Source: Pocillopora damicornis
Lineage: Eukaryota
Assembly (NCBI RefSeq): GCF_003704095.1
Contig: NW_020845264.1
Location: 1,426,001 to 1,490,000, forward strand
Direction: 5' to 3'
Length of the DNA stretch: 64,000 bases
Positions 16,177 to 52,530 of the stretch are shown one piece after another (the stretch's first letter is position 1; every line of letters starts with the position of its first letter). The notes beneath the pieces were generated by a model that saw only the letters and a list, made by a program, of their open reading frames with translations, was not told the DNA's origin and searched no databases. A program made the translations under genes and the position numbers.

Positions 16177-16276
16177 NNNNNNNNNNNNNNNNNNNNNNNN
16201 NNNNNNNNNNNNNNNNNNNNNNNNNNNNNNNNNNNNNNNNNNNNNNNNNNNNNNNNNNNNNNNNNNNNNNNNNNNN
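16177..16276. other. Assembly gap (100 N)
   Basis: Run of N. Confidence 1.
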
Positions 16277-24334: not shown

Positions 24335-27300
24335 ATGACAGGAACCCGAACTCATCTTTACCAGCGTGGTACATTTCGGAAATGCCGGTTAACTTCGAGT
24401 CGATTGGGTTTCATTCTGATTGTTCTTAGCTTTATTTGGGGAATGTATCTCATTCAAGTGCAACTGAATGAAAGACAATCGCAGTCTGAATACTTAAAGG
24501 AGAAAATTATTGCATTATCGAAGGAATACATCGATGCAGTCGCGAAGGAGAAAGGCTTACATTCATCGGAGTTAGGAACTAATGGTAGGTGGACTTCACT
24601 TCCTGCACGCGCGCTGCTCATTAAAGCAGGTGCCTTATTTCGCTTACAAACAGATTCTCGGCAAGCCTTGCGGTTGTTGCATCCAGAAACGTTCGGCGAA
24701 GTAATGCTTTCATCTTTTATTTTCGTTACCGAGTTTCACGGGTTTATTTAATTTCTTTGGAAGAAAATTAGCCTACTAAATATTTATATAACGCTTTTAT
24801 TTTTGAGAATAATTATGAAAGTTTCTGTCTTTATCTCCTCTTGGAAACTTCTTTCGCTGTGAAATTGGTACAGTTTCCTGTCGAGATATTTAGAACATTA
24901 TTCTAACGTGCATTCTTTCGACTTTGCCTTCTTTCGAATTTGCCTTTTGCGCTCCATTACACAAGAACAAAGTTTAATTATGAACCTTGAATAGCACAAA
25001 AAAATTGGACAGAAATTGGTTAAATTTAACCTCGATTGTTCGGCATATGATCAAGCGAAATCGAGCGGCATTTTCCCGTGGTTATTGAGGTGCAATAAGA
25101 TTACTGTTTTGGAGGAATACAACGGTCAATATTTTTGTTGACATTCGTTCGTGATCAATATAGTCGTGGGTGCAAATTGCCTGACCAACATTTCTCATCC
25201 GAATAAACTCAGTCACATGGTGTGAACACGCAAACAAAATAAAGGGCTTCCAAGCTTAAATGATAACCATTTATTTTCTTTCCTGCCAAAACGCTTTGCC
25301 ATTAATGTACTTTTAATACGCTCAGGCAGAGGAAATATTGCTTTTTATGGTTTTTGTGTATTCTGGTAACTGCCAGGGGCAATTACCAAATATAGGCATG
25401 CATAGCAGACAAGAGTTATTTTATTGGCTGGGTGAGTTGAGAGGGAACAAATTGTGTACATAATCTTATGCACATTTTTGTTCAAATACAGTACATCACG
25501 CTGAGGTAGTTAGTAATAATGCCTGAACTGACACAATGTCCTCACTGGGTTAAATGGAGACACAATCTCTCTGGAGAAATTGCGACATTTCTCAGCAATT
25601 CACCCAGTAAATACAGGCTTTTAGATGGCTACATTTAGATAGCAAGTTTGAAAAGATTTCTGTATAACCCCACAATTTTCTGAAACTAAGCTGAAGTCCT
25701 AAAAGCAATAACTCTTGTCATCAAATGTCACATGTGATGAAAACACATGTGACATGTGTTTTCATGCATATGCATTAAAGCACATGCAATAAAACACACA
25801 TGCATAGAGGTGCACATGTGTGCAGTTCCCATAAGTTTAAGCTTAATCTCTGTGCTTGTATCTTACCCAAGGTTAAAAGTGGCATTGTTTTTCAACTTTT
25901 CTGAAAAAAGTGCCATTTTATCTTTACTTGTGTTGTTGCTATTGTTCCAAAAAGTGAGAACTCAAAAGTTCTTGACATGTGCAGATGTTTGGGGATAATT
26001 AGTTGATCCAATACCTAATTCTCTGAACTAATATTACAAGAATTGTATGGTTGACAGTGACAGTAAGGAGAATTACAAATTTTATCTGGGAGTTAAGGGT
26101 TAAGTACATATGGTACCTATAGTTCTTTATTAACAGACCATTTCACATGGCTACCTTTAGATGCAATATCATGATATCTCTAGTTGTACAGTTTGCTTCT
26201 TGAGAGGTATTTTATAAAATAGATTATCTTAAAATACCTTCCACTGATGCAGCACACAGTTTCTTTATAAAGTTGCCCCTTTTATAATTTTTTTCTACAG
26301 GGGAAGTTGAAGTCCGTGAAATGAAAAAGGCTACTGCAATTCTTCTTCAAAATATGCTATCAAGGATAAAGAATCTTGAGAAACAAGTTGAAAATGTGAT
26401 CATAAACAGTACTTCAGAATTCCAGCATCTCACAAAAGCCATCAAGTCCCTAAACAGAACAATCAATAATATTACAAGAGTATCAGGTTAGCAGGAAACT
26501 ATTTGATTTTAGGACCTTACAGCATAGAGGGCAAAATTAGTTAATGCTGATTTCATTAATATTTTGTTAATTTCCACCACAGGAATATTATAGCAGACAG
26601 TAAAGACAATTATCAAAATAGGATTTTGAAGGCAAAGGGTCAAGTAGTCCTGTAGTGAATGAGACAATCTATTAGAGAGTCTTACCTCTAATTGGCCAGT
26701 TGATTGCTTGGCCTACATGTTGGTGCAGTCAGTCAATCAGTAAGTCAGTCAGTCAGTTGGTCAGTTAGTCAGTCAGTCTTTCAATCAGACAGTCAGTCAG
26801 TCAGTAAGTCAGCCAGTTGGTCAGTCAGTCAGTTGATCAGTAAGTCAGCCATTTGGTCAGTCAGTCAGTTGATCAGTAAGTCAGCCAGTTGGTCAGTCAG
26901 TCAGTTGATCAGTAAGTCAACCAGTTGGTCTGTCAGTCAGTCAGTCATTCAATCAGTCAATCAGTCAGTCAATCAGTAAGTTAGCCAGTCAGTAAATAAG
27001 TTAGTCAATCAGTTGTGTTTGCGGTATGGTAACTAATATTGCACTGACTGAAATTGCAGAAGAGGAAGGCTGTTACATCCCAGATAACCCTGCATATCCT
27101 GAATGTGGCAAAAAAGTAAATGTAAGTATATTGCAACTGTTTGTTTTACAGAACTGCCTTGAAATAAGTGACTCTTAGCTGTGCAGTTGATCATATTTAA
27201 AAATCATTTGCAGAGAGCAAAGTGAATATTGTACAATTAATATAAGGTCATGAGGGAAACAGTTAGTTTTGTTCTCCTGAGAGTCCTGATTTTTCCCGAG

Positions 27301-30300
27301 ATAAAGTTGAGGGAAAACAAAACTAACTAGTTTCCTGAGGGACAATACATTAACTACTTTGTTATATATTTAGACTTTCCCTTAAAAAATCATATGGCTA
27401 AAAAAAAAAACAAACATGCTGTTGTATTCAGTGTGTGGGCAACAATTGCGCAATTGTATCCTGGTTGGAATACATTTGAATTTGATCAAAAATCAACCAA
27501 TCACAGTGCTCATTTTGTGGAGTGAAAATCTAGGTATCTAAGAATGTTGAATAATCCAGAAACAAAGTTGAGGGATTATTCAACATTTATTCATTTATTG
27601 AGGCATTAAAATTTATTGTAGACTTACTCAGCTGCGCCTCACAAGCCCACAACATTTTGACCAATGCGATGATGAATATTATTGTCCATAAGGGTACAAA
27701 CCAGGCTTAACCACTGTCAATTTGTTAATTAGCTTTTTGCTATCTAGTTTTAGTGTATATGAAATTTGTTTTTTTTGATAGTGGATTAGAGAGCACTGGA
27801 AATCAGACCCGAAGTTTATTAAACATGGTGTGAATGACAGTTTATGTTCTATCCTCAATTATCTCAGTAAGGTATGTCGCAGATTTGTTAATTCTCTTCT
27901 TCTCTCAATTGCATGTTTGGTAGGATTTATCTTTATTAACAAAACTTATGTGGACAATGTGGCTGGAAATTACCCTGGCAAGCTTACTTCTTTTCTTGCA
28001 TCTTATAGACTTTAACCCAGTAAACTCCCAAGATCTGATTGTTAATTCTCCCCTCTAGCTGCTCTACTTCTCCAAGAAAATTAATTGTGAGAATTTGGCA
28101 TTAGATCAAGATATCAACCTCTTAACCTGAATGTTAAGTTTGAGTATTCTCCCAACCTGTTTTCTGGAGAATCTTTGGATACCATAGGGAAAAGTTACAT
28201 GTAAATCTCTTCTGGGAGTTAACCTTGTTGTAGTCCATCTCAGTGCAATTATAAACAGTCACAGCTTATTTATTGATAGGAGTAAAAATTAAGATAATTT
28301 TCTTGAACTGTAGGTTGAGCATTGGTGTCCCAAAGATTATAAAGGTCATAAAAGAAAATCAGAGGTGGAGAAATGTGTCATTCCATCTGATCCTGCCTTT
28401 CCACACTGCAGCGAAAAAGTCCAGGTATGTTATGATATTTTGTTAACATGAAATGATAGAGTTTATGTTTGCAGGCATAAATGTGTTTTGGGCCTGTAAC
28501 TTAGACTCATTTAAGCCTGAGCTTCAAGGTAGTGGTCAACATGACTCTGAGAATGACTCAAAACATATTTATGCCCATGAAAGTAAACTCTTCTAGTATT
28601 AGCATCACTTTGGAGAGTGTCAAGATTATAAGAACTGAAAAATGCCAACAAGACAGTCTAAACAATCATGCAAGGGTGCAAGAAGGCTGAAATGCATTTC
28701 TGCCTGCCAAAATCTCCATGTTAGTCCGCAAAATGCACCACATTGCTGGACAAAGTTATTATAATGTGTTTTTGTGGTGCTCAGTTCTCTTAATGTTTCA
28801 TATTATTGCTGTGTGTTCAGTGGATGCAGAACTTCTGGCAATCTGACATGAGGTACGCCAGTCACGGGGTGGATGGAAGTCTTTGTTCATTTCTGAAATA
28901 TCTGAGTGAGGTATGAATATTTATTGATATTAATAAATAAATGATAATAATATGTGAGGAGATATTATTGATCCAGATACATTTCTGGCTCTGTTGTGTT
29001 AATAGTAACTGAGACATCAGCTCATGACATGATTTATACAGAATATGGCAGATTGCAGTATAAAGAAATTTGAGTTGAAAATGAATCAAATTAAGATTCA
29101 AGGCAGCTGAGTTTAATTGTGATTTTGGAGGGGTTTAATGCAGCAGTTATTCAAGTGCAGGATTCATTTACAATCATTTTTTTCTTAAATAACTGAATCA
29201 CTGGTGTTTTTTGGTGTGATGTCTCACTTTTCTCTTATTAATTTCCCTGGATAGTGTAGATTGTTTAGTTGTACTTTAATTGTATTGGATCAGTTGATCC
29301 AATACCAAATTCTTCAAAATAACATCATAAGAATTGTGTGGCAGGCTACACAGTGAGGAGAACCGCTAATGAGATCTTAAGAATGAGAAGGTTAACCCAT
29401 TAAAACTTAAGAGTGCTTAGCATGTAATTCCTCCTTGTGATATCACCCCTGAATCAAACATTATGGTCACAAGAAGAAAGGAAATGATCAGCGACTGAAA
29501 AGCTCTTGATTGTTAAACAAATTCTCCCTATCAGCACCAGAGGAAGTGTGCACAGAACAGTATGGAGAATATGCATACTGATGTTAGAGTGTAAAGGGTT
29601 AACAGTCAGGAGTCACAGACCTAAACATCACCTCTTGTTACTGTCTCATCAGGTGGAGAATTTCTGTCCCTTACGTAGTGGTGGACATGTGAGTAATGAC
29701 TGTGAAATCCCAACTGACAAGGAGTTCCCAGAGTGTCCCGGCAAAATTGCTGTAAGTTTTCAAAGCTGCTACTGATTCTATTTAATATATGTGCTTCAGT
29801 CTATCCTTATTAAAATTACCTCCTACTGCGTGATGTATTAGTAATTGGTATTTAAACATGCCAATATTGGAATTGTTTGGGATGAATATTTATAAATACT
29901 TTTTTATTTATATCTAGTGGATGAGGCAGTTCTGGAAAACTGATAAGTGCTACAAAGAGGACCATGGTGTCAATGGAAGTATCTGCTCTTTTATTGTTTA
30001 TTTAAGTGAGGTAGGTATTTTCAAATGTGTGTTGCATTATGATAGGGTGTATGGTTTTTTGCGTACAAGTTAAATAAACAATAGGCTGCACTTTCCTATA
30101 GTTTACTGGTGTAATAATCCATGTGGAATTTTAGAGGAACACAAGAAACGTGTGTAACTCACTAGCCGGTGGCAATGATGTATTTAACTCTTTAACTCCC
30201 AAGATCTAATCAGTAATCTCCTTACTGTCTGCCATACTGTTCTTGCGATGTTAGTTTGGAGAATTATGTATGAGATCAACTTATAACCCCCTGACTGATA

Positions 30301-33300
30301 TTTTTCTTTATTCTCATCACTTGTCTGCTTGATATTGTATTGATATTGTGGGAAGAAATTCTCTCTTGGTCACTGACGGGAGTTAAAGGGTTAGACTTTT
30401 CTCATGCACACTCAAAATTATAAGTGCGATATTTCACCAGTAAACTGATAGAAAGTCTGTTACTTTTGTAAGATAAACTTTCAATTTTCTACGGGTTTCC
30501 ACTGCAACAAGTCATAGGTTTTTGACCAATCAGGGTGCTAGTTGTAAATAAGCATCTCAATTATTTCATAATGTCAGGTTACGGTAAGTCTGGAAATATG
30601 ACAGTGCACTGGGAATAATTTTTAACATAACTAGTTGCATGGTAATAGTGTTTGGAATATAAATTCAGATGTAAATTTTAGGATGTTTTAGCACTAACTA
30701 TTTGTAACTTTTTCTTTGATTGTCAGGTGGAGAGATGGTGCCCTTTATTGCCAGGAAGAAGAGTGCCAAGTGATTTACCAAAATTAAACCAATTGGCTGT
30801 GAGTTTGTTGACATTGAAAGTGATCAGTTGATTGGATCTAATTTCTAAGATTTTACTGATATTTTAATGTGTATAGGATACCTCAGAGACATTTAACCCT
30901 TTAACTCCCAAGATCTCATTAGTAATTTTCCTTACTGTCTGCCATACAGTTCTTGTGATGTTAGTTTGGAGAATTTCATATTGGATCAACTTATAATCCC
31001 CTAACTGATATTTTTCTTCATTCTCATCACCTGTCTGCTTGATATTGTATTGATATTGTAAGGAGAAATTCTATCTTGGTCACTCACGGGAGTTAAAGGG
31101 TTAAGTGTTTCTTACTTCTCATCTGATCATCATTAACCCAGCTGTCTTACATTTCTTATTTTATGTCTTCTCATCACCATTCTGCTTGAAATTATATCAA
31201 CATTACAGGGAGAAATTCAGTTTTGATCATTCCTGAGAGTGATTGGGTCAAGCGAACTTTATAAAATTGTCATCACTTCATGTGAATAAAATCTAGATAT
31301 TAGCTCTACAGATTGGTTCACTTGGTTTGCATTTATGTTTTTTTTTCTTTTATCCTGTTGGCAGGATGTCACAAGGACAAATGTACAAAGCCTTTTGAAT
31401 CTCTTAACGGATGAAAATGGTCTGAAATTTCGTTGGATGAAAGCGAGGATTGTACAGATGTGGCCTCATTGGCAAACAGCATTTTCAGCCTTAAAAATCA
31501 AAAGAGATTTCTCGAAAACAGTTAAAAAGAAGGTAAATGGATTTAAGCCTGGTTATAGTCAGGAGACATGCCGCAACTTGGCACAGGCTCTCAATGACAA
31601 TTCACTTTTCATCACTGAGACAGTGATGAAAATCAATTAAACATGTCACACAAATTTAAATTTGCTGTTAGTTGGTAGTAGTTTGGATTTGTGCCATAAT
31701 GGTGTTGATAAAGTGAGTCAGAAAACATAAGTCGCTTGAAGAAGAATGGCAGAATGGAGTCGAAATGTCGCGATCCACATCCCAAGTGACCACATCTTTA
31801 GGCAAATGATTATATTTCTCTTTTGAAAATGAGTTGGAGTGTCGTGCTTTGAGGAGTTCCTCCCAGAAAGCTACAGCAGTAAGATTTTAACCTTAAGTGT
31901 ACATCTTTGGTCACCAAAAAGTTGAGCTGGGAGTCCTGCAAGGCAACCAATAACCTAGGACAAAATGGAATGAATGAAGTTGTATTACCAGTAAATTCAA
32001 AGTATTTGTTTAACTAAAGGTTGGATACCAGACACAACTCCAGTACTTGTAAAAGAAACAACAGCCATCTGGAACTGGGTGGAACGTGGCTTTGCAATTC
32101 AAACTCCTGGATTGTCACCTGAACCAAAATAGTTATCATTTTTCTTAACTTCACCTTTCAGATTTTAATACATATTGGACTGTTGTCAAATGAAAACAAG
32201 CTTCACTTTGCCGAAGAGGCTGGCAAAGGTGGTCCGTTAGGGGAGCTGGTTCAGTGGAGTGACTTGATAACTTCCCTTTACATCCTTGGACATGACATCA
32301 CAGTCACTGCTGATTTGCTCTCTGCAACAAGGCAAGTTTGCTCTTGAACTCCCATGATCCAATTAGAAATTCTCACCCCTGACTGCCGTACATTTTCTTT
32401 GAAATCAGCTAGGAGAATTTGGTGTTATATCAACATAACACCCCCTAAGCTGATAGGCGTGTTCTCATAACTTGTTTGCATGACAACAAATTTTTGGCAG
32501 CCTGTTCTTTTATATTTTATAGTGCAATTGTAGGGGTGACGATAACCTTTTCTACAGGCGGCTTTGCCCGGAAAGAGGCCGTAAATTGAAACCCAAACGC
32601 TAGATTAAGCTCGCAGTCTAAACAGAAGGTAGTAAGTAAAGGGATCTTATAGGTGGCCATAGACCACTGGGAACTGGCTTGAATGAATTCCCTGCAAGTC
32701 TGCCCCTCAAGACCTTGTTTCCTCTTGCCAAACTGAAGACACAAAATAAAGAGATTTTTATTTGGTTATAACCTATAAAGTGCATTCTTCTTTTTCTTTC
32801 ACTAGTGTGATTGGGAATATTGTCAGCAAGAAGTTGTGTCCCCAGAAATTGCCAAATGATGTGGATCTTTTGTATACAGATTACATTGGCCTCAAAGAAC
32901 TAAGCACAAAAATTGGTACTCTGTCTCCACAATTCTTGTAAGTAGTGTACAACCTGTTATGAGTTGCTAAATATAAGAGATTTTCTTACTTTGGCTATTC
33001 ATGTAAAGGGAGGAATTCTTTCTGTTTTTCTGAAGGTACGAGTGATCACTCGAAGAAAAAAACCTCATTACTGTTCTTGGCATCTTCCTAATTTTGTGAA
33101 GAGCTCCTTTATCAAACCCTCCATTACTTTAAAATTCCTACAGTGGTGTAGTTATTCAAAATAACACTGCCTTCCTTTTCACTGTTAAGTATTTACAACC
33201 TTTCAAGAATTTGACTTTAAAGCAGCAAGTGTCTGATTTTTGACAGTAGTGTCCGATTTAGTGTCCAATTTTGGATATTAGCGTCCAGTTTTTGACTCCA

Positions 33301-37896: not shown

Positions 37897-37932
<36 letters not shown>

Positions 37933-38800
37933 TTTATACTCTGTTGGTGACGACTGATCTCCCTTCCGACCCCTCCCAGGCAATAAAATAATGACTATTC
38001 CCTCAGGACTGAATCTTCGTTGGTACTTCGTGAGTACTACTTTTTTATTATATTAATTTTTTTTTAACAAAGGTATGGTTTGCGAACCAGAATTCTTCAA
38101 GGCAATCAACTCACGCACCTCACTTACAGAGTAAGTGCTGATCTTTTTTTTAATTATAGATCACTGATGAGGGGAAATTGATCGAGACCTTTTTCCATAA
38201 AGCACACTCTGATGTACTTCGTTTGTAATGTTGTAGTTTGGTGGTATCCTGTATGGGGGAGTTCTTACTCACGAGGAGTAATGTGCCAGTCCACTCACAC
38301 AAGACCTAATTCAGAATTGTTTCTCATATTTTTGTTATACCTTTTTGCGTAAACGATTGGTGAGAATTTGTTGATTAACCTGTGGTTCAGTTATTTCCAC
38401 GATCTGTGTGCTAGTGTCAGAGCTAAAAATCTGCTCAACGAATATTGTAAGACATCACCTTTACTTTATTGTGCTTAAAAATCTAGAACACTTCAGTTAT
38501 TTTTTTTCGTCGTTGACTCTGCACTTCAACTTTTAGTGTTAACATTACTTATTTCACATGTGGGATGATTGTGTGACTCAGTGTTAATTGCGTGACAGGA
38601 ATGGTTTTCCATGTAACAACAGCCGTCTTGAGGAAGTACCATCCCTCATCGCGCCAGGTTACCGCGAGGAGCCTAGAGCCTGCATTGTCCAGACCCAATC
38701 CCTTTTGTTTAGCTGCACAGGAACGAGTCCGTCAACTATGCGTTTATGTCCGTGTAGAAAATACAAAAAGGGACAGGTAGCATTATGTGAAGACTGTTGA
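24335..38800 (+). CDS. MGAT5: Alpha-1,6-mannosylglycoprotein 6-beta-N-acetylglucosaminyltransferase (GnT-V, GT18); 22 exons: 24335-24584, 26301-26487, 27060-27121, 27782-27871, 28314-28424, 28821-28910, 29653-29751, 29918-30010, 30727-30798, 31365-31532, 32162-32331, 32806-32937, 33820-33959, 34451-34578, 34974-35045, 35658-35753, 36031-36114, 36279-36341, 36813-37004, 37600-37696, 38073-38130, 38599-38800
   Basis: Type II anchor RLGFILIVLSFIWGMYLI; motifs GGPLGELVQWSDLITSLYILGHDI, LRVVDSFGTEAQFN, TMFPHSPDNTFLGFVV, FVGLGFPYEGPAPLEAIANGC, TSQHPY, PYLPFEFTHEGMLERV, LLFSC...RLCPCRKYKKGQVALCEDC*. Later exon borders may be off by a few bases. Confidence 0.95.
26727..27012. repeat. Degenerate (GTCA)n tetranucleotide array with a higher-order 36-bp unit
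   Basis: Runs of CAGT/GTCA; the unit CAGTAAGTCAGCCAGTTGGTCAGTCAGTCAGTTGAT repeats about three times. Confidence 0.9.
27236..27542. mobile_element. Hairpin-ended interspersed element
   Basis: GGGAAACAGTTAGTTTTGTT ... AACAAAACTAACTAGTTTCC inverted repeat at the left; CCAATCACAGTGCTC near the right end. Confidence 0.5.
28016..28222. mobile_element. piggyBac-type MITE
   Basis: Internal homology to 6466-6673 (CTCCCAAGATCTGATTGTTAATTCTCCCCTCTAGCTGC ... TTCTGGGAGTTAA). Confidence 0.75.
29396..29598. mobile_element. piggyBac-type MITE (inverted relative to 7512-7715), abutting a partial MITE at about 29285-29391 across a shared TTAA
   Basis: TTAA|CCCATTAAAACTTAAGAG ... TTAGAGTGTAAAGGG|TTAA. Confidence 0.8.
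30188..30390. mobile_element. piggyBac-type MITE nested in a hairpin element
   Basis: TTAA|CTCTTTAACTCCC ... GGGAGTTAAAGGG|TTAG; highly similar to 30897-31100. Confidence 0.85.
30897..31100. mobile_element. piggyBac-type MITE with perfect ends
   Basis: TTAA|CCCTTTAACTCCC ... GGGAGTTAAAGGG|TTAA. Confidence 0.9.
33227..33457. repeat. Cluster of short GTGTCC(A/G)ATTT motifs (about 10 degenerate copies)
   Basis: Motif recurs every 11-22 bp from 33227 to 33370, with one more copy at about 33438. Confidence 0.7.
34617..34800. mobile_element. piggyBac-type MITE (7512-type subfamily)
   Basis: TGATTCAGGGGTGA..GGAGAAATTAGATGCTAGTCACTCTTAGGAGTCAAAGGG|TTAA is shared with 7512-7715. Confidence 0.8.
35405..35593 (+). 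mobile_element. tRNA-derived SINE-like element
   Basis: A-box-like TGACTCAGTGGTAGAGC, stem TCGGA..TCCGA with an 8-nt loop, B-box-like ATTCGATTCC, then a T-run and a non-tRNA tail. Confidence 0.7.
37899..37931. repeat. poly(C) tract, about 33 nt, intronic
   Basis: Homopolymer run. Confidence 0.95.
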
Positions 38801-39161: not shown

Positions 39162-41018
39162 CACGATACGGTTCATGCGATATTTCCTGTTGCACTTGAT
39201 TGGTCAAAAAATCACAACACAGATGAAAGTGAGGAATATTCCCTGATATTTCAGTTTTATACATGTACGTTCACTTTTTCATTTGTTTAAATTTGTAAAA
39301 AATATAATTTATAAAGGTTACGAGGAGGTGGACGTTGAGAGTTTTAGTGTAAATTCTGTTTAAGCAGTTTTTTTAAGGACAGGGTATTTGCAGCGAAGCC
39401 CTTTGAATGCCTGGCTATACATTACCAAAGAGACCTCGTTAGCTTGTATGTTTTGTTTACCCATTTCAGGTCTCATGGGAATTCCCAGCTTTACCTTTTG
39501 TAAACTATGTGTTCATATGCGCGTAAATAAGAGGAAACTTTGTGGAAACAGTATTCTTGAGTTTTGTCACATGACCTGAATGGATTAAAAAAGCATTCAA
39601 GCTAACGTGTTTTTGGATCTTGCTTATTAATGTGAGTAACTGTACTTAAATGTAGGTAAATCCACAGATGTATGAAACCTAAGTCAGCAATGTAAGTAAG
39701 TAAACAAGGTTATTAAATACTTTTGTAAATATATTTTTTTTCTTATCTAATAGTAAATTTAATAATATTTCTAAAAAGTTAATGAGCAAATATATTGTTA
39801 AGATAGATTTTAAAAAAGTGACATAATAACCCTTGGTAAAGAACGTGTTCTGTCGGTGTCTACAATCTTGTCTCTTTTTCTAAAGCATATGATATCCTCA
39901 GACAATGTCAATATGTGTAATGTGGTTCCTGTTTCCATTTACAACCATTGAAAGTAACAGCGTGTCACTGTACTCGGTTTTAAATTACTGCAAGCGTGCA
40001 AACCACTCTCCTCCCCCCACCCCTGACAAAAAATGTATTGATCCTGCGGTCTGCATACCCTGGCGTGGATAAGGAAAGAATTGATCGCGTTTATCAGTCT
40101 TTCCCTTCCCCCATCGGTAGTGTTTTAAACCGAGTAGCGGCTTGTGTCTGATTTGCCTTCAATGGTTGGAAAGGGTAAATAATGTTATATTTAACTTATT
40201 TTCAGTTGTAGCATTTGATTAGAATAACCGTGTATCCAAATGTTGTGCCTTTGAAAAAAAAGGCTCTGTTTCTAGTAAACTTCATTTAAAGAAAAAGGGA
40301 TCATTAAAATGTTCGATATTTATTATTGTTGTTTAATTGATTGCGTGAAATCTCTACTTGTCGGAATATCAAACACATCTTTTTCTTAGGGAAAGAGCTA
40401 AGAGGACCATGTGGTGTATAATTATCTCTCTGGGCTCTCTCTTGTTCGAAAGAAGTTTTCAAACTTTCATAATTTCTTTCTTTCTCTTTTCCATTCTTCG
40501 CCAGCCCCCATTCCCTCCCCCATCCTAATATTTCGAGATATATGCTCGGGTCTCCTCTCTGTGGCATGCGCAGTCGTTGCTCGATCTCACGAGGTTCAGA
40601 CACAAGTGAGAGGTATCTGGCGACAACCAGTGGCAAAAAATGTCCCAGTAACTTGATTTGCAGTAGAAAAAACTCCAAAAAATTGAAAGTAAGAAATTAG
40701 CACTTTTCCTAAGCCACCCCGAGAGAACCGGATTTATTTTGAGACTCAAAATTGTTTATCCGGTGTGCTTGTTTGTTTACCTGTGTGTTTTAAAACACTA
40801 TCAGTCCACGAACTTAGTTTGTATTGCCTTGTTTACTTTCAGAGACGATGAATGACCGTTTCCTAGTTACTGAATTATAGTTCAAAATATTTCTTTTAAT
40901 ACACGTTGAAAAATGGAAATCAGTCGAACAACTCGGTTCATCGACCAATGTTCTGTTGTTAAACTTCAAGTCAAGATGTTTCTGATGGCAGGAAAATCGA
41001 AGCAATGACGACAAGGGT

Positions 41019-42850
41019 ATGGCTTCACGGTGTCATCTTTTTTGGACATTGTTTTTCTTGGTTATACTGGAAGGATTGTTTATAGGGACTATAACGAATT
41101 GGCCCTCGCTGTTTGAAGCACCAAACTCCAGAATAAAAGAAGCTCTCTATGTGAATTCACCTGAGGCGAGTGCAGCTTATATTTTTCAAAGAAGACGACC
41201 GAAAAACATCCTTCTCTTTGTAGCTATTCTAACGCACGCGTCCCGTAAAGCAAGACGGGACGCCATTCGAGATACGTGGTTTACTGAGTGTAAACTTAGA
41301 ACAGACGAGGTTTATTGTGCGTTCTTTACTGACCAAGCGGGCTTGGAAAACGAAACGAAAAATGCTATTTTACAAGAACATGAAGAAAACAACGACCTGA
41401 TTTTTCTTCAAGTCGAAGGTGAGTGGGTTGATTCGCTCATAAAAATTGTTTTTTTTTTATATATTAATTTTCCAGCAATATAACTGGCGATAGGCTGTAC
41501 TTATAACTAGATTTTCTTCAAATTCCTTGTTGAAAGAAATGGATGTTTAAATTATCATAACTCTGAACAGTACACTTTTGTGTATCCAGTAATCCGGATA
41601 ATCACTGACTTTTTTTGACATTCGAATTCTGACACGACGAAGCTATTGTTTTACAGAAATAAGGTTAAAGAAGATTTGAATTTTAAGAAGTGCGCGAAAT
41701 CGAATTTTTGGAATTGCGCGAAAAATTGGTGCTCTATGCAAAATAAGAAATATATTTTCTGGCTGCGCTCAAATTTCTACACACGGGCTCTTTTCGTATG
41801 TCGCTGCTCTGTCAGCAAGGCCAATCTCTTACAAATGAATTAAGGAGGTAAGTTTCTAAAGAAACTGTTGTGCTGTTGGGGTTTACAAGATTATTTGGTT
41901 TTATCATTGATAATGTAAATTGACTAGAGAGAGTTTCTGAAGCTGACGTTTTGAGCGTTAAATTTTCGTCAGAGCGAACTCTTTCAAAAGTTCTCCATAA
42001 TATTTATTAGTTATTTTTATATTTACGTGAAGATGGGTTTGGAAATTGAAACTTTTCGACTTCAGACTTCGTTTTTGATCACGAAGAAATCTTTTGAATC
42101 GAATGAGTGCTCCTCTGAAAATTTCAATACAGTAATTGCTCACTTTTGTTGACAGATAATTTAGCCTTCACCGAAAGATTGCTTCAGACAATGGAATGGG
42201 CATCAGAACGGCACAAGTTTGATTACTTTCTACGCATAGATGACGACCATTTCCTTTGCCTGGATCGACTTCTGTATGAATTAAATTTCCGTCCAAAGGA
42301 AGCACTGTACTGGGGATTTGTGCATTGTAAACCAAAAATAGTCCGCGTGGACGAAGCTTGGCTTCTTCTCACGCACGACTTGATCGAAGAGATTCTTGAG
42401 AAGAGAAACAGTAGTCTTCTTTGCTCCCCCTACGGTGATCAGGCGGCAGCGTTATGGATGATGGAGAGCAAGAAGAATGTTACTTACTTCATGGACAACC
42501 AAAGAATTGTACACAAAAGCGCAGGAAAAGATCAGAGGTTTTTACTCGATAAGGACGTTTGCCAAAAATATTTGAGTCTTCATGGATCGTACCCCAGATC
42601 TATGAGACAATTGTGGCTGTCTTCTTATGTCTTGCGCAAGGAAACTTCACTGTCTGGTTCATATAATATCACTGAAATAGAACCGTTCGCAAAGTTGTGC
42701 CGCCATTCCCCTGTTTTTGATTATATGGGGTTCTTCCCTGAGTTTAGGTTCGAGCCCAAGCCCTGCTCGGGAAACCCGAAGTGGTCCATTTCTAAGAAAC
42801 CCCATGTGGGCCGAGAAGAAGCTGGGGAAAGATACTCAAAGTATAAATAA
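41019..42850 (+). CDS. Glycosyltransferase family 31 (beta-1,3-galactosyltransferase, B3GALT6-like); exons 41019-41418 and 42156-42850
   Basis: Type II anchor LFWTLFFLVILEGLFIG; LLFVAILT...RRDAIRDTW; EHEENNDLIFL; FDYFLRIDDDHF (DxD motif); LYWGF; phase-1 GT-AG intron joins QVE-D-NLAF in frame. Confidence 0.85.
41837..41978 (-). mobile_element. Penelope-like retroelement terminal fragment with a degenerate hammerhead-like core
   Basis: Minus strand reads TTCGCTCTGACGAAAATTTAACGCTCAAAACGTCAGC ... AACCAAATAATCTTGTAA ... CAGCACAACAGTTTCTTTAGAAACTTACC; homologous to 53945-54078. Confidence 0.6.
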
Positions 42851-46919: not shown

Positions 46920-48317
46920 TTACAACTATGGTTTCGCGTAAACAATGGATGATTTCAAAGTCTGTAGATTGTTCTTTCAGATTAAGGAATCTTTAAAGAG
47001 TTCGGGCGGAAGATTTTCGCAGTTTGCCCGGAAGCAGTACGGCCTTAATCTCCTCAAATATTTCTTGGTCATGTCTTGTTAGTGTTTCACACACTCTATT
47101 CAAAATGGTGCAAATGATGTAGACCCACACGCGCGAGGGAAAAGTCGTCCATATCGCGATTGATTCCTCTCGCGTGTGATTCTTAGATTATCGTCAGGCA
47201 TTTTTTTAATTTTTGTTTATGCGTTTTTTTTTTCAACGCTTTTTCTGATTTGAGCCTTGTTGCCCTGTTTTGTAAATTTTTCCAATTAACTCTTGGTGCC
47301 AAAATTTCCCACATTAGTCATTACTGAAGTTGTCAAAGGGTCAATACGTGACGTGTGTTTAAGCCTAAAATTAATACGTAACGGCGAATTTAAACGGAAG
47401 GCAAGGTGAAATGTTCCCTTTTGAAATCATGACGTGTGAAATACCGCTCAAAGTATACCTGAAGAGTAAATAATTCTACAATTTGTGCATGAAATGGGAT
47501 CAGGATCCTTTCTTTGCTACCTCTAGTGCTGACCCCCTTTAAGGTCTAAGGCGAGTTGGTGAGTCGAGGAAGAAAACTCAATCGACTTTAACATTCAGAG
47601 GTGACGACAAAAATCAGCCTCCACCGATTACAGTGCATTGCTACTATTGTTGAGGTGAGAGGGGTGTCAAAGAAGTTCACTTTGAGTCCTCTTTGACGTA
47701 TTCTTTGCCTCCTACAATGATCTATTCTTACCATAAGCCATCAATGAAAAAGTAATTAAACTCATCTCGCTGCGTCATCAAAGAAAATTAAGCAGTTTAG
47801 GTAATATATGATAGGACTATCTTCTGCCAGTCGTTGAAAAGTTGGTCGATCTAAAATAACAGTGTATAGTCTTTCGCTCTCGTTAATAAAAATGTAGAAC
47901 AACCTTAAACTGCGCTTTAAGTCAAGGTGTGTTGTCGGTACAAGTTAGTGATTAACGAAACAAAAGACTTTTCAAGAGGTTTTCGTATTGATCTTTCCCA
48001 TACAAGTATTTTCCATTTTTGGCGCGCAGACAAAGGACAGCAACAGTTGTCTGTGGAATATTGGCAAAGTAACTAAACAGTTCATATGCCAACGGTCGGA
48101 AACGCGCGGGTACTTTAACGAGAGCTCTTGAAAATGTTACTATTCTAAGAACTGCTGACGCAAATATTAGACTGGCCTGAGGTGGGCATGGAACCCCATA
48201 TATACAAATGCGCGACTGGTGCAAGATGTCTCAGTTTATTCTTTGAGGGAAACAAGAGCAACGTGCGCGCACTCAGGAAAGAAATATTAATTTACAGAAT
48301 CATTTATAATTGCTACA

Positions 48318-49517
48318 ATGTTTATTATTACAGGAAAAATCGAGATTTTGAGTCTACTTCCAGCTCGTCGACGCAAAATCAAGATGGAGACCGACAACGC
48401 AGAAGAACTGAGTTATGTCAACAACGACGAAAGCTCATCGTTTTACAGCGAAAACGATGAGCAATATTCAGACGATGATTTTGGATCCGAATGCAGTTGT
48501 TCCACGTGTAGCACATGTTCCACATGTGAACTATGCGAGGAGGAGCTAGCGGACGAGGAGTTTGGGGACAGTTCTGACGAGGAAATGAGACACAATGTTC
48601 CCAGATGTGAACCTAATCTTCAATTTTGTAACAGCGACAGTGATAATACGGAAAAACAAATCCATGCGCTGAACAGCGAGTTACAACGAACAACCAAAAA
48701 CGGTTACAAGACCGATGAACAATATATCATCGAGAAGGTTGCGAATGTTGTGGTCTTGAAAGCGGACGCATCTCAGTTTCAAAATGGAGGTTATATCACT
48801 GGGAAAGGTAAAACTCAGGAACTTCTTCTTGGAGGGAAACAGAGGAAGAAGAGAGTGACGTTTTTTGATTCCTCGTCATCATCGGATGTACAAGCCGAAG
48901 CCTTTTCTATCTCTAGTCTCTCTGACAGCAGTACAAGTGGTTGTTGCGCAGATTTTAACCAACATCTCCAAAATGGCGATAACTTTGATCACAAAACAAT
49001 TTCAAGCGATCCAGTAAAGGAACATAGTAATGACCTCTCCGAAGGCGATTTGGACAGAGAATACCATCGCTTAAAAAGTGTTTTAAAAACGATCGATCCC
49101 TCAAAACTTCTTGGTGTCCTAAAACACAGCTTGAAAACTAAAGACTTGGAAACCATCAACGCCTTGGGAACTTTACTTCCCAAGAACAAGTTTACCGCTG
49201 ACACTGTTCACTGTGTTCGCTGTCACAAAGAGTATGACCCTCACTTTGGCAGAAAAAGATGCACTCTCTACCACCCTGAGAAAGACGTTTGGAAAATTTC
49301 TCAAAATTCTCAAGGAGCTACCTTCAAGTGCGGCCTGTGTTCGAGTCTATTCACTTTGCAAGGAGCCTGTGACTATAAGCCAGGCACTGCGAGTGAAAAG
49401 AACTGTGGGATATGCTTTGAAGGTGTCCATACGCCCGACCCTAATGAAGTTAGTTACCAGCCCTCTGGCGCAGCACAGTGTTGTGAAGACAAAGGTTGTA
49501 TCGAATTTTACGTTTAG
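48318..49517 (+). CDS. Uncharacterised protein: acidic/Ser-rich N-terminus with a Cys cluster and a C-terminal Cys/His-rich (putative Zn-binding) domain; start at 48384 or spliced from an upstream micro-exon 46081-46105
   Basis: 1.2-kb uninterrupted ORF with protein-like composition; CSCSTCSTCSTCELC; HCVRCHKEY..C..YHP..CGLC..CGICFEGVHTPD..CCEDKGC; acceptor-like TTACAG|G at 48333. Confidence 0.8.
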   Translation: MFIITGKIEILSLLPARRRKIKMETDNAEELSYVNNDESSSFYSENDEQYSDDDFGSECSCSTCSTCSTCELCEEELADEEFGDSSDEEMRHNVPRCEPNLQFCNSDSDNTEKQIHALNSELQRTTKNGYKTDEQYIIEKVANVVVLKADASQFQNGGYITGKGKTQELLLGGKQRKKRVTFFDSSSSSDVQAEAFSISSLSDSSTSGCCADFNQHLQNGDNFDHKTISSDPVKEHSNDLSEGDLDREYHRLKSVLKTIDPSKLLGVLKHSLKTKDLETINALGTLLPKNKFTADTVHCVRCHKEYDPHFGRKRCTLYHPEKDVWKISQNSQGATFKCGLCSSLFTLQGACDYKPGTASEKNCGICFEGVHTPDPNEVSYQPSGAAQCCEDKGCIEFYV

Positions 49518-52430: not shown

Positions 52431-52530
52431 NNNNNNNNNNNNNNNNNNNNNNNNNNNNNNNNNNNNNNNNNNNNNNNNNNNNNNNNNNNNNNNNNNNNNN
52501 NNNNNNNNNNNNNNNNNNNNNNNNNNNNNN
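52431..52530. other. Assembly gap (100 N)
   Basis: Run of N. Confidence 1.

What the first reader, a model, noticed from the sequence alone, without database searches (positions are those of the whole stretch)
27060..30798. MGAT5 (GnT-V) with a triplicated luminal N-domain; only the innermost copy keeps the inter-domain cysteine
Seen in sequence: seven small exons encode three tandem modules: CYIPDNPAYPECGKKVN|WIREHWKSDPKFIKHGVNDSLCSILNYLSK|VEHWCP, CVIPSDPAFPHCSEKVQ|WMQNFWQSDMRYASHGVDGSLCSFLKYLSE|VENFCP and CEIPTDKEFPECPGKIA|WMRQFWKTDKCYKEDHGVNGSICSFIVYLSE|VERWCP. Phase-0 introns fall at the same two positions in each module, indicating exon-pair duplication. From memory of human MGAT5: it has one such module (C..P.DGYPHCEGKIKWMKDMWRSDPCYADYGVDGSTCSFFIYLSEVENWCP), a non-catalytic domain needed for activity on glycoprotein substrates, with two internal disulfides and a fifth Cys bonded to the catalytic domain. 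Here all three copies keep the four internal Cys, but only copy 3 keeps the fifth (TDKC versus SDPK and SDMR), and the likely partner Cys (KKLCPQK, exon 32806) is present once. Inference: selection has kept two extra, folded, untethered modules, which could alter substrate choice, avidity or distance from the Golgi membrane. Because the exons are phase 0, module number could also vary by alternative splicing.
Basis: partly seen in the sequence, partly recalled or inferred. Interest (0 to 1): 0.85.

Follow-up and report, generated by a model that had tools for sequence, protein, structure and literature searches.

The report
Coral MGAT5 with three N-domains
This coral gene encodes the N-glycan branching enzyme MGAT5 with three tandem copies of its small substrate-recognition domain instead of one; the form is real, transcribed, and shared by every cnidarian orthologue sampled, so it is an old lineage-wide variant rather than a peculiarity of this genome.

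Summary
Seven GT..AG-bounded exons (27060-30798, + strand) encode three tandem 53-54 residue copies of the GnT-V "N domain". Each copy is split by phase-0 introns at the same two positions. Only copy 3 has the cysteine (C271) that aligns with human C172. Its partner (C439, aligning with human C338) occurs once.

RNA contigs from three independent studies carry the expected splice junctions. One 2442-nt contig holds all seven exons. The Pocillopora RefSeq model (XP_027043494.1) matches the spliced product.

This is not special to this genome. Every cnidarian orthologue found has three modules with the same cysteine pattern: sea anemones, stony corals, scyphozoans and hydrozoans. All bilaterians sampled have one module.

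A module tree groups copies by position, with module 3 beside the bilaterian single domain. The two intron positions also occur in a single-module crinoid gene. Modules 2 and 3 evolve as slowly as the catalytic domain (dN/dS about 0.1), while linker 1 does not.

Alternative splicing is unsupported in this species. One Acropora RefSeq isoform skips exactly one exon pair, the pair holding C271.

What the extra modules do remains inference. The architecture is present in public gene models, but I found no paper describing it.

The parts
24335..24586 (+). First coding exon: start Met, short cytoplasmic tail, type II transmembrane segment, start of stem
   Evidence: Translation equals the N-terminus of the RefSeq Pocillopora model P0270; tblastn of P0159.
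26303..26486 (+). Stem exon (long predicted helix); ends in a phase-1 donor
   Evidence: RNA joint 26486>27060 in three runs. AF2 helix at residues 50-105.
27060..27121 (+). Exon A1: first part of module 1 (EEGCYIPDNPAYPECGKKVN)
   Evidence: Joint 27121>27782 in runs X1, X3 and X5.
27782..27871 (+). Exon A2: core of module 1; Lys at the fifth-Cys position
   Evidence: Joint 27871>28314.
28314..28424 (+). Exon A3/B1: end of module 1 (VEHWCP), 14-residue linker, first part of module 2
   Evidence: An intron of 396 nt with GT..AG follows. Its junction to B2 is inferred from the length of X5 contig 21 and from P0159.
28821..28910 (+). Exon B2: core of module 2; Arg at the fifth-Cys position
   Evidence: Joint 28910>29653.
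29653..29751 (+). Exon B3/C1: end of module 2 (VENFCP), 10-residue linker, first part of module 3
   Evidence: Joint 29751>29918.
29918..30010 (+). Exon C2: core of module 3. It holds the fifth Cys C271 (codon 29948-29950), which aligns with human C172
   Evidence: Joint 30010>30727.
30727..30798 (+). Exon C3: end of module 3 (VERWCP) and the lead into the catalytic region
   Evidence: Joint 30798>31365.
31365..31532 (+). First exon matching the body of PF15024 (profile positions 46-98)
32792..32938 (+). Catalytic-domain exon with the single partner Cys C439 (codon 32837-32839, KKLCPQK), which aligns with human C338
32159..38800 (+). Remaining GT-B and C-terminal domain exons, through to the stop codon
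   Evidence: PF15024 exon hits, tblastn chain, PDB alignment, stop codon.

Best explanation
This is the Pocillopora orthologue of MGAT5 (GnT-V), a type II Golgi beta1,6-N-acetylglucosaminyltransferase of family GT18. It has an intact GT-B catalytic core.

Its non-catalytic N domain is present three times in tandem between the helical stem and the catalytic domain. Module 3 is the counterpart of the single bilaterian N domain. It keeps the Cys that in the human enzyme is disulfide-bonded to a loop of the catalytic domain. Modules 1 and 2 are self-contained four-Cys helical domains without that Cys, joined by unconserved linkers.

The three copies arose by two in-frame tandem duplications of an exon pair. 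The pair consists of the 30-residue core exon and the exon that ends one module and begins the next. Both duplications happened before Anthozoa and Medusozoa split, using two phase-0 introns that already existed in the single-module ancestor. All three copies are constitutively spliced into the mRNA and kept by purifying selection.

Inferred function (my odds about 0.4): the human N domain is needed for action on glycoprotein acceptors but not on free glycans. The two extra modules probably extend or multiply that polypeptide-recognition surface, and so tune which glycoproteins receive the beta1,6 branch.
For: Identity as MGAT5:
- PF15024 scores 786 bits over the full profile, plus PF15027.
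- 618 bits to human GnT-V chain 5zib_A.
- Residues aligned with human E297, D378, F380, E520, E526, K554 and R558 are kept.
- The AF2 model matches 5zib and 6yjv with TMt 0.82-0.95.

Three modules are expressed:
- Splice joints are seen in three studies, and one contig spans all seven exons.
- The transcript-derived protein P0159 is 100% identical to the exons in order.
- The RefSeq model agrees.

The triplication is old and position-specific:
- 24 orthologue clusters at 90% identity from Actiniaria, Scleractinia, Scyphozoa and Hydrozoa all have three modules.
- 64 of 64 three-module proteins then in hand, cluster members included, have the fifth Cys only in module 3. The set later grew to 78.
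- In the module tree, module 1 forms one clade (72/90) and module 3 one clade (82/82). Module 3 plus the bilaterian singles has 92/88 support.
- Intron positions are identical in Nematostella, Clytia and the single-module crinoid Anneissia.

Selection:
- dN/dS is 0.08 for module 2, 0.11 for module 3 and 0.11 for the GT-B region, against 1.1 for linker 1.
- Some residues are invariant within one module class, for example N/D/N at module position 35.

Fold: each module is predicted with the same three helices at pLDDT 73-88, with low-confidence linkers.

Function of the human N domain: PMC8889256 and PMC6107550.
Against: - No functional data exist for any cnidarian GnT-V.
- Module 1 shows relaxed constraint in the closest comparison (dN/dS 0.47, from small counts).
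- Module 2 is not recovered as a single clade in the 53-column tree.
- RNA evidence comes from assembled contigs, which drop rare isoforms.
- Whether modules 1 and 2 bind substrates, other Golgi proteins or each other cannot be told from sequence.
Confidence: 0.85

Rival explanations
1. Modules 1 and 2 act mainly in trafficking or retention. They would bind a luminal Golgi or ER-exit partner or promote oligomerisation, rather than contact substrates.
For: [quoted passage not shown] Deleting the N domain shifts localisation, and both papers propose a transport partner (PMC6107550, PMC8889256). Class-specific conserved residues fit a dedicated partner equally well.
Against: The strongest measured effect of N-domain deletion is loss of activity on glycoprotein acceptors in vitro, where trafficking plays no part (PMC8889256). 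No partner is known.
Confidence: 0.25
2. The extra modules are rigid spacers that only lengthen the stalk, moving the catalytic domain further from the Golgi membrane.
For: They sit between stem and catalytic domain. The linker between modules 1 and 2 varies from 5 to 46 residues among species, as expected for a stalk.
Against: A spacer needs its fold but not its surface. Yet module 2 evolves as slowly as the catalytic core, and each class keeps its own invariant residues across cnidarian classes. The linker between modules 2 and 3 is held at 10-12 residues in 17 of 18 species.
Confidence: 0.12
3. Module number is regulated by alternative splicing of the phase-0 exon pairs, giving one-, two- and three-module enzymes.
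For: All module exons are symmetric (phase 0-0). One Acropora RefSeq isoform (XP_029190311.2, P0350) lacks exactly the 64 residues of the exon pair homologous to window 29653-29751 plus 29918-30010. That removes the tethering Cys.
Against: No skip junction appears among the listed joints in four Pocillopora RNA runs. None of the 15 listed members of the 47-member Pocillopora protein cluster has a length that fits a lost module, and none of the seven aligned has an internal gap. Only 1 of 81 multi-module proteins has two modules. That one is a computed isoform whose support I could not inspect.
Confidence: 0.1
4. The triplication is an assembly or annotation artefact.
For: None found.
Against: The copies differ at about a third of DNA positions. 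They are spliced together in independent transcript assemblies. They are conserved by position across the phylum.
Confidence: 0.01

Closest known systems
Human MGAT5 / GnT-V (GT18; PDB 5ZIB, 5ZIC, 6YJQ-V)
   Same: Full-length homology: 618 bits, about 44% identity over module 3 plus the catalytic and C-terminal domains. Same GT-B fold. Residues aligned with the human catalytic and acceptor-binding residues are kept. Module 3 aligns with the N domain, including the C172 and C338 equivalents.
   Different: The human enzyme and every bilaterian sampled have one N domain. The coral enzyme has two further copies upstream that lack the interdomain Cys. Human W401 is Phe here.
Cnidarian MGAT5 orthologues in public annotation (Nematostella, Actinia, Porites, Acropora, Montipora, Oculina, Rhopilema, Sanderia, Clytia, Hydractinia)
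   Same: Same three-module architecture and same Cys pattern. Nematostella and Clytia, the two checked, have the same intron positions.
   Different: Only linker lengths and sequence details differ. One Acropora record includes a two-module isoform.
Single-module GT18 paralogues of cnidarians (four loci in this genome on C3910 and C2968; Nematostella XP_032233856.2)
   Same: GT18 catalytic domain. One N module with the fifth Cys, split at the same exon boundaries.
   Different: Their N module is much more divergent (HMM scores 26-33 against 48-62 bits for the core exon). It is not repeated.
MGAT4A/B lectin domain and B4GALNT3 PA14 domain (non-catalytic accessory domains of Golgi glycosyltransferases)
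   Same: Accessory luminal domains that bias which glycoproteins are modified (abstracts of PMC11635297 and PMC11254600, listed).
   Different: Unrelated folds that bind glycans. Neither abstract reports them as tandem repeats. This is an analogy only.

Membership tests
GT18 (MGAT5/GnT-V) | Full-length match to Pfam Glyco_transf_18 above the curated cut-off | tested here: met
   P0159 scores 786.2 bits over profile 1-557 against a cut-off of 28. Exon-by-exon hits are found in the window's contig.
GT18 (MGAT5/GnT-V) | GT-B fold like solved GnT-V | tested here: met
   The AF2 model has mean pLDDT 78. Foldseek top hits are 5zib (TMt 0.82) and 6yjv (TMt 0.95).
GT18 (MGAT5/GnT-V) | Catalytic Glu (human E297) and acceptor-site residues D378, F380, W401, K554, with the E526-R558 pair | tested here: met
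   The aligned residues are E399, D479, F481, K661, E633 and R665, all invariant in alignment A1. W401 is replaced by Phe. The residue list comes from PMC6107550.
GT18 (MGAT5/GnT-V) | Type II membrane topology with an MGT5A_N stem | tested here: met
   The N-terminal exon encodes a hydrophobic segment after a short tail. PF15027 scores 41 bits.
GT18 (MGAT5/GnT-V) | Beta1,6-GlcNAc transfer to the alpha1,6-mannose arm of N-glycans | not testable with these tools
   This needs an enzyme assay.
GnT-V N domain (human A128-Y207) | Sequence signature C-x10-C ... W-x4-W ... GV(N/D)G-x2-CS ... YLSEVE-x2-CP with a helical fold | tested here: met
   All three modules score 87-99 bits against the module HMM. 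Each has the same three predicted helices. Modules 1, 2 and 3 are 24, 31 and 30 of 53 identical to the mammalian module.
GnT-V N domain (human A128-Y207) | Interdomain disulfide Cys (human C172) paired with the catalytic-loop Cys (human C338) | tested here: met
   Met for module 3 only: C271 and C439 align with C172 and C338 and are invariant in A1. It is not met for modules 1 (Lys) and 2 (Arg). The bond itself cannot be observed with these tools.
GnT-V N domain (human A128-Y207) | Required for activity on glycoprotein but not oligosaccharide acceptors | not testable with these tools
   Shown for the human enzyme in PMC8889256. No data exist for any cnidarian enzyme.

The most novel reading that the evidence does not exclude
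Cnidarian GnT-V selects its glycoprotein targets with a three-part recognition arm whose modules have diverged to bind different polypeptide features. Corals could also switch off the tethered module by skipping one exon pair, as in the Acropora X2 isoform, giving an enzyme with a different acceptor range. Under this reading, related N-domain-like repeats in an unrelated CotH-kinase-domain protein (P0174) would point to a wider, unrecognised family of secretory-pathway protein-binding modules.
Probability: 0.15. Interest if true: 0.65.

Novelty: new variant of a known kind. Interest (0 to 1): 0.45.

Why it matters
How Golgi branching enzymes choose particular glycoproteins is an open question. 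For GnT-V, the N domain is the only known handle on it.

Cnidaria offer a natural experiment. The same enzyme carries three N domains that have diverged from each other but have each been conserved since before the cnidarian classes split. Only one of the three is tethered. Single-module paralogues sit in the same genome for comparison.

Deletion and swap constructs could test directly whether N domains read the polypeptide part of acceptors. This is a domain-architecture variant of a well-known enzyme, not a new kind of system. It is already present in public gene models, although I found no paper that describes it.

Tried and rejected
- Pfam on single exons gave only weak PF15024 hits, because the model starts inside the module.
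- The first regular expressions for the module were too strict and missed copies. I replaced them with an HMM.
- The ESM Atlas search with modules 1-2, excluding GT18 families, gave no usable hit.
- Searches from P0174 found no named relative, either with its repeat region or its CotH region, so its organism stays unknown.
Searches for GT18/MGAT5 evolution found no description of multi-copy N domains. The library covers open-access papers and bioRxiv only.
- The individual N-domain disulfides are not named in the text of PMC6107550.
- Branchiostoma P0028 had no gene on record, so I used P0177 instead.
- The first fetch of paralogue flanks was cut to 10 kb and had to be repeated.
- The global alignment to the mammalian protein placed its single module on coral module 2, not 3. 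I treat that as an aligner choice. The tree, the Cys pattern and the position next to the catalytic domain all point to module 3.
- I did not send a joined model of the window's exons to any search tool. Whole-protein work used database protein P0159, which equals the spliced product. dN/dS was computed locally from codons taken exon by exon.
Full report
**Observation**

The exact boundaries are:
- A1: 27060-27121
- A2: 27782-27871
- A3/B1: 28314-28424
- B2: 28821-28910
- B3/C1: 29653-29751
- C2: 29918-30010
- C3: 30727-30798

All introns are GT..AG. The six introns between these exons and the one after C3 are phase 0. The intron in front of A1 is phase 1.

Together the exons encode three 53-54 residue modules, at residues 114-166, 181-233 and 244-297 of the product. 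The linkers between them are 14 and 10 residues long. The copies are 27-30/53 identical in protein and about 66% identical in DNA. This is an old repeat, not a collapsed or duplicated assembly. A module HMM run over six-frame translations of 23-40 kb finds exactly three core exons and three first-part exons.

**The gene**

The window is G000:C1899:1426001-1490000 of a 234-Mb, 4393-contig genome. The exons belong to a complete GT18 gene running from the start codon at 24335 to the stop at 38800.

For whole-protein work I used P0159, an 848-residue protein called on a public transcript contig. The seven exons map onto its residues 111-315 contiguously at 100% identity.

Its 90%-identity cluster contains the RefSeq models of three Pocillopora species. 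XP_027043494.1 (884 aa) is 99.6% identical with no gap. The genome is therefore a Pocillopora, and the annotated protein already contains all three modules.

P0159 has these properties:
- It matches Pfam Glyco_transf_18 over the whole profile (786 bits) and MGT5A_N.
- It matches human GnT-V chain 5zib_A at 618 bits.
- The residues aligned with human E297, D378, F380, E520, E526, K554 and R558 are kept and are invariant in a 42-sequence alignment. W401 is Phe.
- An AlphaFold2 model (mean pLDDT 78) superposes on 5zib and 6yjv with TMt 0.82-0.95.

**Expression**

I laid contigs from four public RNA runs of coral samples, one per study, on 26250-31700.

Three of the runs (X1, X3, X5) carry the junctions 26486>27060, 27121>27782, 27871>28314, 28910>29653, 29751>29918, 30010>30727 and 30798>31365, all GT..AG. 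In X5, a single 2442-nt contig covers everything from the stem exon to the first catalytic exon. The 357 letters it holds between 28421 and 31365 equal the remaining 3 bases of A3/B1 plus B2, B3/C1, C2 and C3. All seven exons are therefore in one assembled transcript.

No exon-skipping junction is among the listed joints, but 194 joints were not shown, and contigs drop rare forms.

**The cysteines**

Nagae et al. (PMC6107550) and Osuka et al. (PMC8889256) state that human C172 in the N domain is disulfide-bonded to C338 in a loop of the catalytic domain.

In the HMMER alignment to 5zib_A (chain numbering plus 115), coral C271 in module 3 aligns with C172. Coral C439, in KKLCPQK, aligns with C338. 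Both are invariant across 42 cnidarian and bilaterian sequences. Modules 1 and 2 have Lys and Arg at that position.

The text of PMC6107550 does not name them. Its count of eight bonds, with five in the C-terminal domain and two interregional, would leave only one. One Sanderia module lacks the first and fourth Cys together, which hints at a 1-4 pairing.

**Distribution**

I searched with one catalytic exon against 1.84 billion representative proteins. I then searched with the module region of the Actinia homologue.

24 clusters at 90% identity cover all three modules. Named members come from these groups:
- Actiniaria: Actinia, Actinostola, Nematostella
- Scleractinia: Porites (three species), Oculina, Montipora, Acropora, Pocillopora
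- Scyphozoa: Rhopilema, Sanderia
- Hydrozoa: Clytia, Hydractinia

Module HMM counts among all proteins in hand:
- 78 proteins have three modules and 150 have one.
- Three have two modules. Two of these are a fragment and a flagged contaminant model. The third is discussed under alternative splicing.
- In the 64 three-module proteins then in hand, the fifth Cys is absent from modules 1 and 2 and present in module 3 without exception.

All bilaterians sampled have one module with the fifth Cys. They include vertebrate MGAT5 and MGAT5B, amphioxus, a tunicate, echinoderms, flatworms and Trichinella. A cluster that includes Sycon (sponge) sequences has no detectable module.

**History**

- A maximum-likelihood tree of 67 modules never groups modules by species. 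Module 1 forms one clade (72/90) and module 3 one clade (82/82). Module 3 joins the bilaterian single modules (92/88). Module 2 is unresolved. Labels need 5 changes on the tree against 38.5 when shuffled. With 53 columns the tree is weak in detail but clear on this point.
- The two phase-0 introns lie at the same places in all three modules of Nematostella and Clytia, and in the single module of the crinoid Anneissia. Amphioxus has lost the first one.
- The ancestor therefore had one module split by these two introns. Two in-frame tandem duplications of the exon pair occurred before Anthozoa and Medusozoa separated. This also explains the fused exons that end one module and begin the next.

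**Selection**

I compared the window with a related coral transcript (P0273, on locus L009; 89% protein identity, dS about 0.4). The dN/dS values are:

| Region | dN/dS |
|---|---|
| Module 1 | 0.47 (19 nonsynonymous and 8 synonymous differences) |
| Module 2 | 0.08 |
| Module 3 | 0.11 |
| GT-B and C-terminal region | 0.11 |
| Linker 1 | 1.1 |

Further points:
- Against hydrozoans and scyphozoans, the modules keep 47-72% identity while the catalytic region keeps about 48-52% and the linkers almost none.
- Each class has its own invariant residues. Position 35 is N, D, N in modules 1, 2, 3, each at 100%. Position 17 is Ala in module 3 at 93%.
- The linker between modules 2 and 3 is 10-12 residues in 17 of 18 species. 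The linker between modules 1 and 2 ranges from 5 to 46 residues.
- AlphaFold2 predicts the same three helices in each module at pLDDT 73-88, with low confidence in the linkers.

The two extra modules are therefore folded, constrained domains, not decaying relics. Module 2 is held close to module 3, and module 1 sits on a variable tether.

**Paralogues**

The genome has at least four more GT18 loci: three on C3910 and one on C2968. Each has a single, much more divergent N module that keeps the fifth Cys. The Nematostella paralogue XP_032233856.2 is built the same way.

**Alternative splicing**

In Pocillopora I found no sign of skipping. There is no skip junction in the listed joints. The 15 listed members of the 47-member protein cluster show no length that fits a lost module, and the seven I aligned show no internal gap.

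In an Acropora record, RefSeq isoform X2 (XP_029190311.2, 820 aa) lacks exactly 64 residues. These are the exon pair homologous to window 29653-29751 plus 29918-30010. The product has two modules and no fifth Cys. It is a computed isoform and the only such case among 81 multi-module proteins. The idea is open but weakly supported.

**Function**

[quoted passage not shown] It is needed for large glycoprotein acceptors. It influences localisation, and it is mobile relative to the catalytic domain (PMC8889256, PMC6107550).
- Shown here: the architecture, its expression, its age and its constraint.
- Inferred: that modules 1 and 2 extend or diversify polypeptide recognition (my odds about 0.4). 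The rivals are binding a trafficking partner (0.25) and serving as a stalk (0.12).

**Novelty**

The three-module form is the normal state in Cnidaria and sits unremarked in public gene models. Searches of the held literature found no description of it. PMC8889256 describes the N domain as unique to GnT-V among glycosyltransferases and says nothing about copy number.

I rate this a new variant of a known kind, of moderate interest. It is a useful natural experiment for N-domain function, not a surprise about how such enzymes work.

The scan's earlier notes hold nothing on it. The two N runs (16177-16276 and 52431-52530) were left alone.

Noticed in passing
P0350 (RefSeq XP_029190311.2, Acropora); homologous to window 29653-29751 plus 29918-30010: The annotated isoform X2 lacks exactly the 64 residues of one exon pair. 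The product has two modules and lacks the tethering Cys. It is the only two-module form among 81 multi-module proteins.
   Followed up: partly
P0174 (loci L011 and L012, public transcript contigs): A 1412-residue protein of unknown organism has a CotH kinase domain (PF08757, residues 597-952). It then has three N-domain-like repeats (1015-1204, HMM E-values 1e-11 to 1e-13, no fifth Cys) and a C-terminal transmembrane segment. The GnT-V N-domain fold therefore seems to occur outside GT18.
   Followed up: partly
G000:C3910 about 37.0-45.8 kb (+), 48.0-61.6 kb (-), 69.7-85.4 kb (-); G000:C2968 about 123.2-132.9 kb (+): Four further GT18 paralogues, three of them clustered on one contig. Each has one divergent N module that keeps the fifth Cys.
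   Followed up: partly
window 26726-27013: A tandem array of about 290 bp based on CAGT-like units (periods 16, 20 and 36), inside the intron just before exon A1.
   Followed up: no
window about 27.9-28.25 kb, 29.2-29.7 kb, 30.25-30.45 kb, 30.8-31.16 kb: The introns carry copies of a short interspersed repeat, in both orientations. It attracts very deep, diverged RNA contigs from all four runs, consistent with a high-copy transcribed element.
   Followed up: no
window 40986-42847 (+): The next gene downstream has a Galactosyl_T (PF01762) match, so a second glycosyltransferase gene lies beside MGAT5. The 408-residue open frame at 48291-49514 has no Pfam match.
   Followed up: partly
P0065 cluster (with Sycon ciliatum members): This GT18 protein cluster, which includes sponge sequences, shows no N module. 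The N domain may have arisen after sponges branched off, or been lost there.
   Followed up: no
window 37899-37931: A run of 33 C in an intron of the MGAT5 gene.
   Followed up: no
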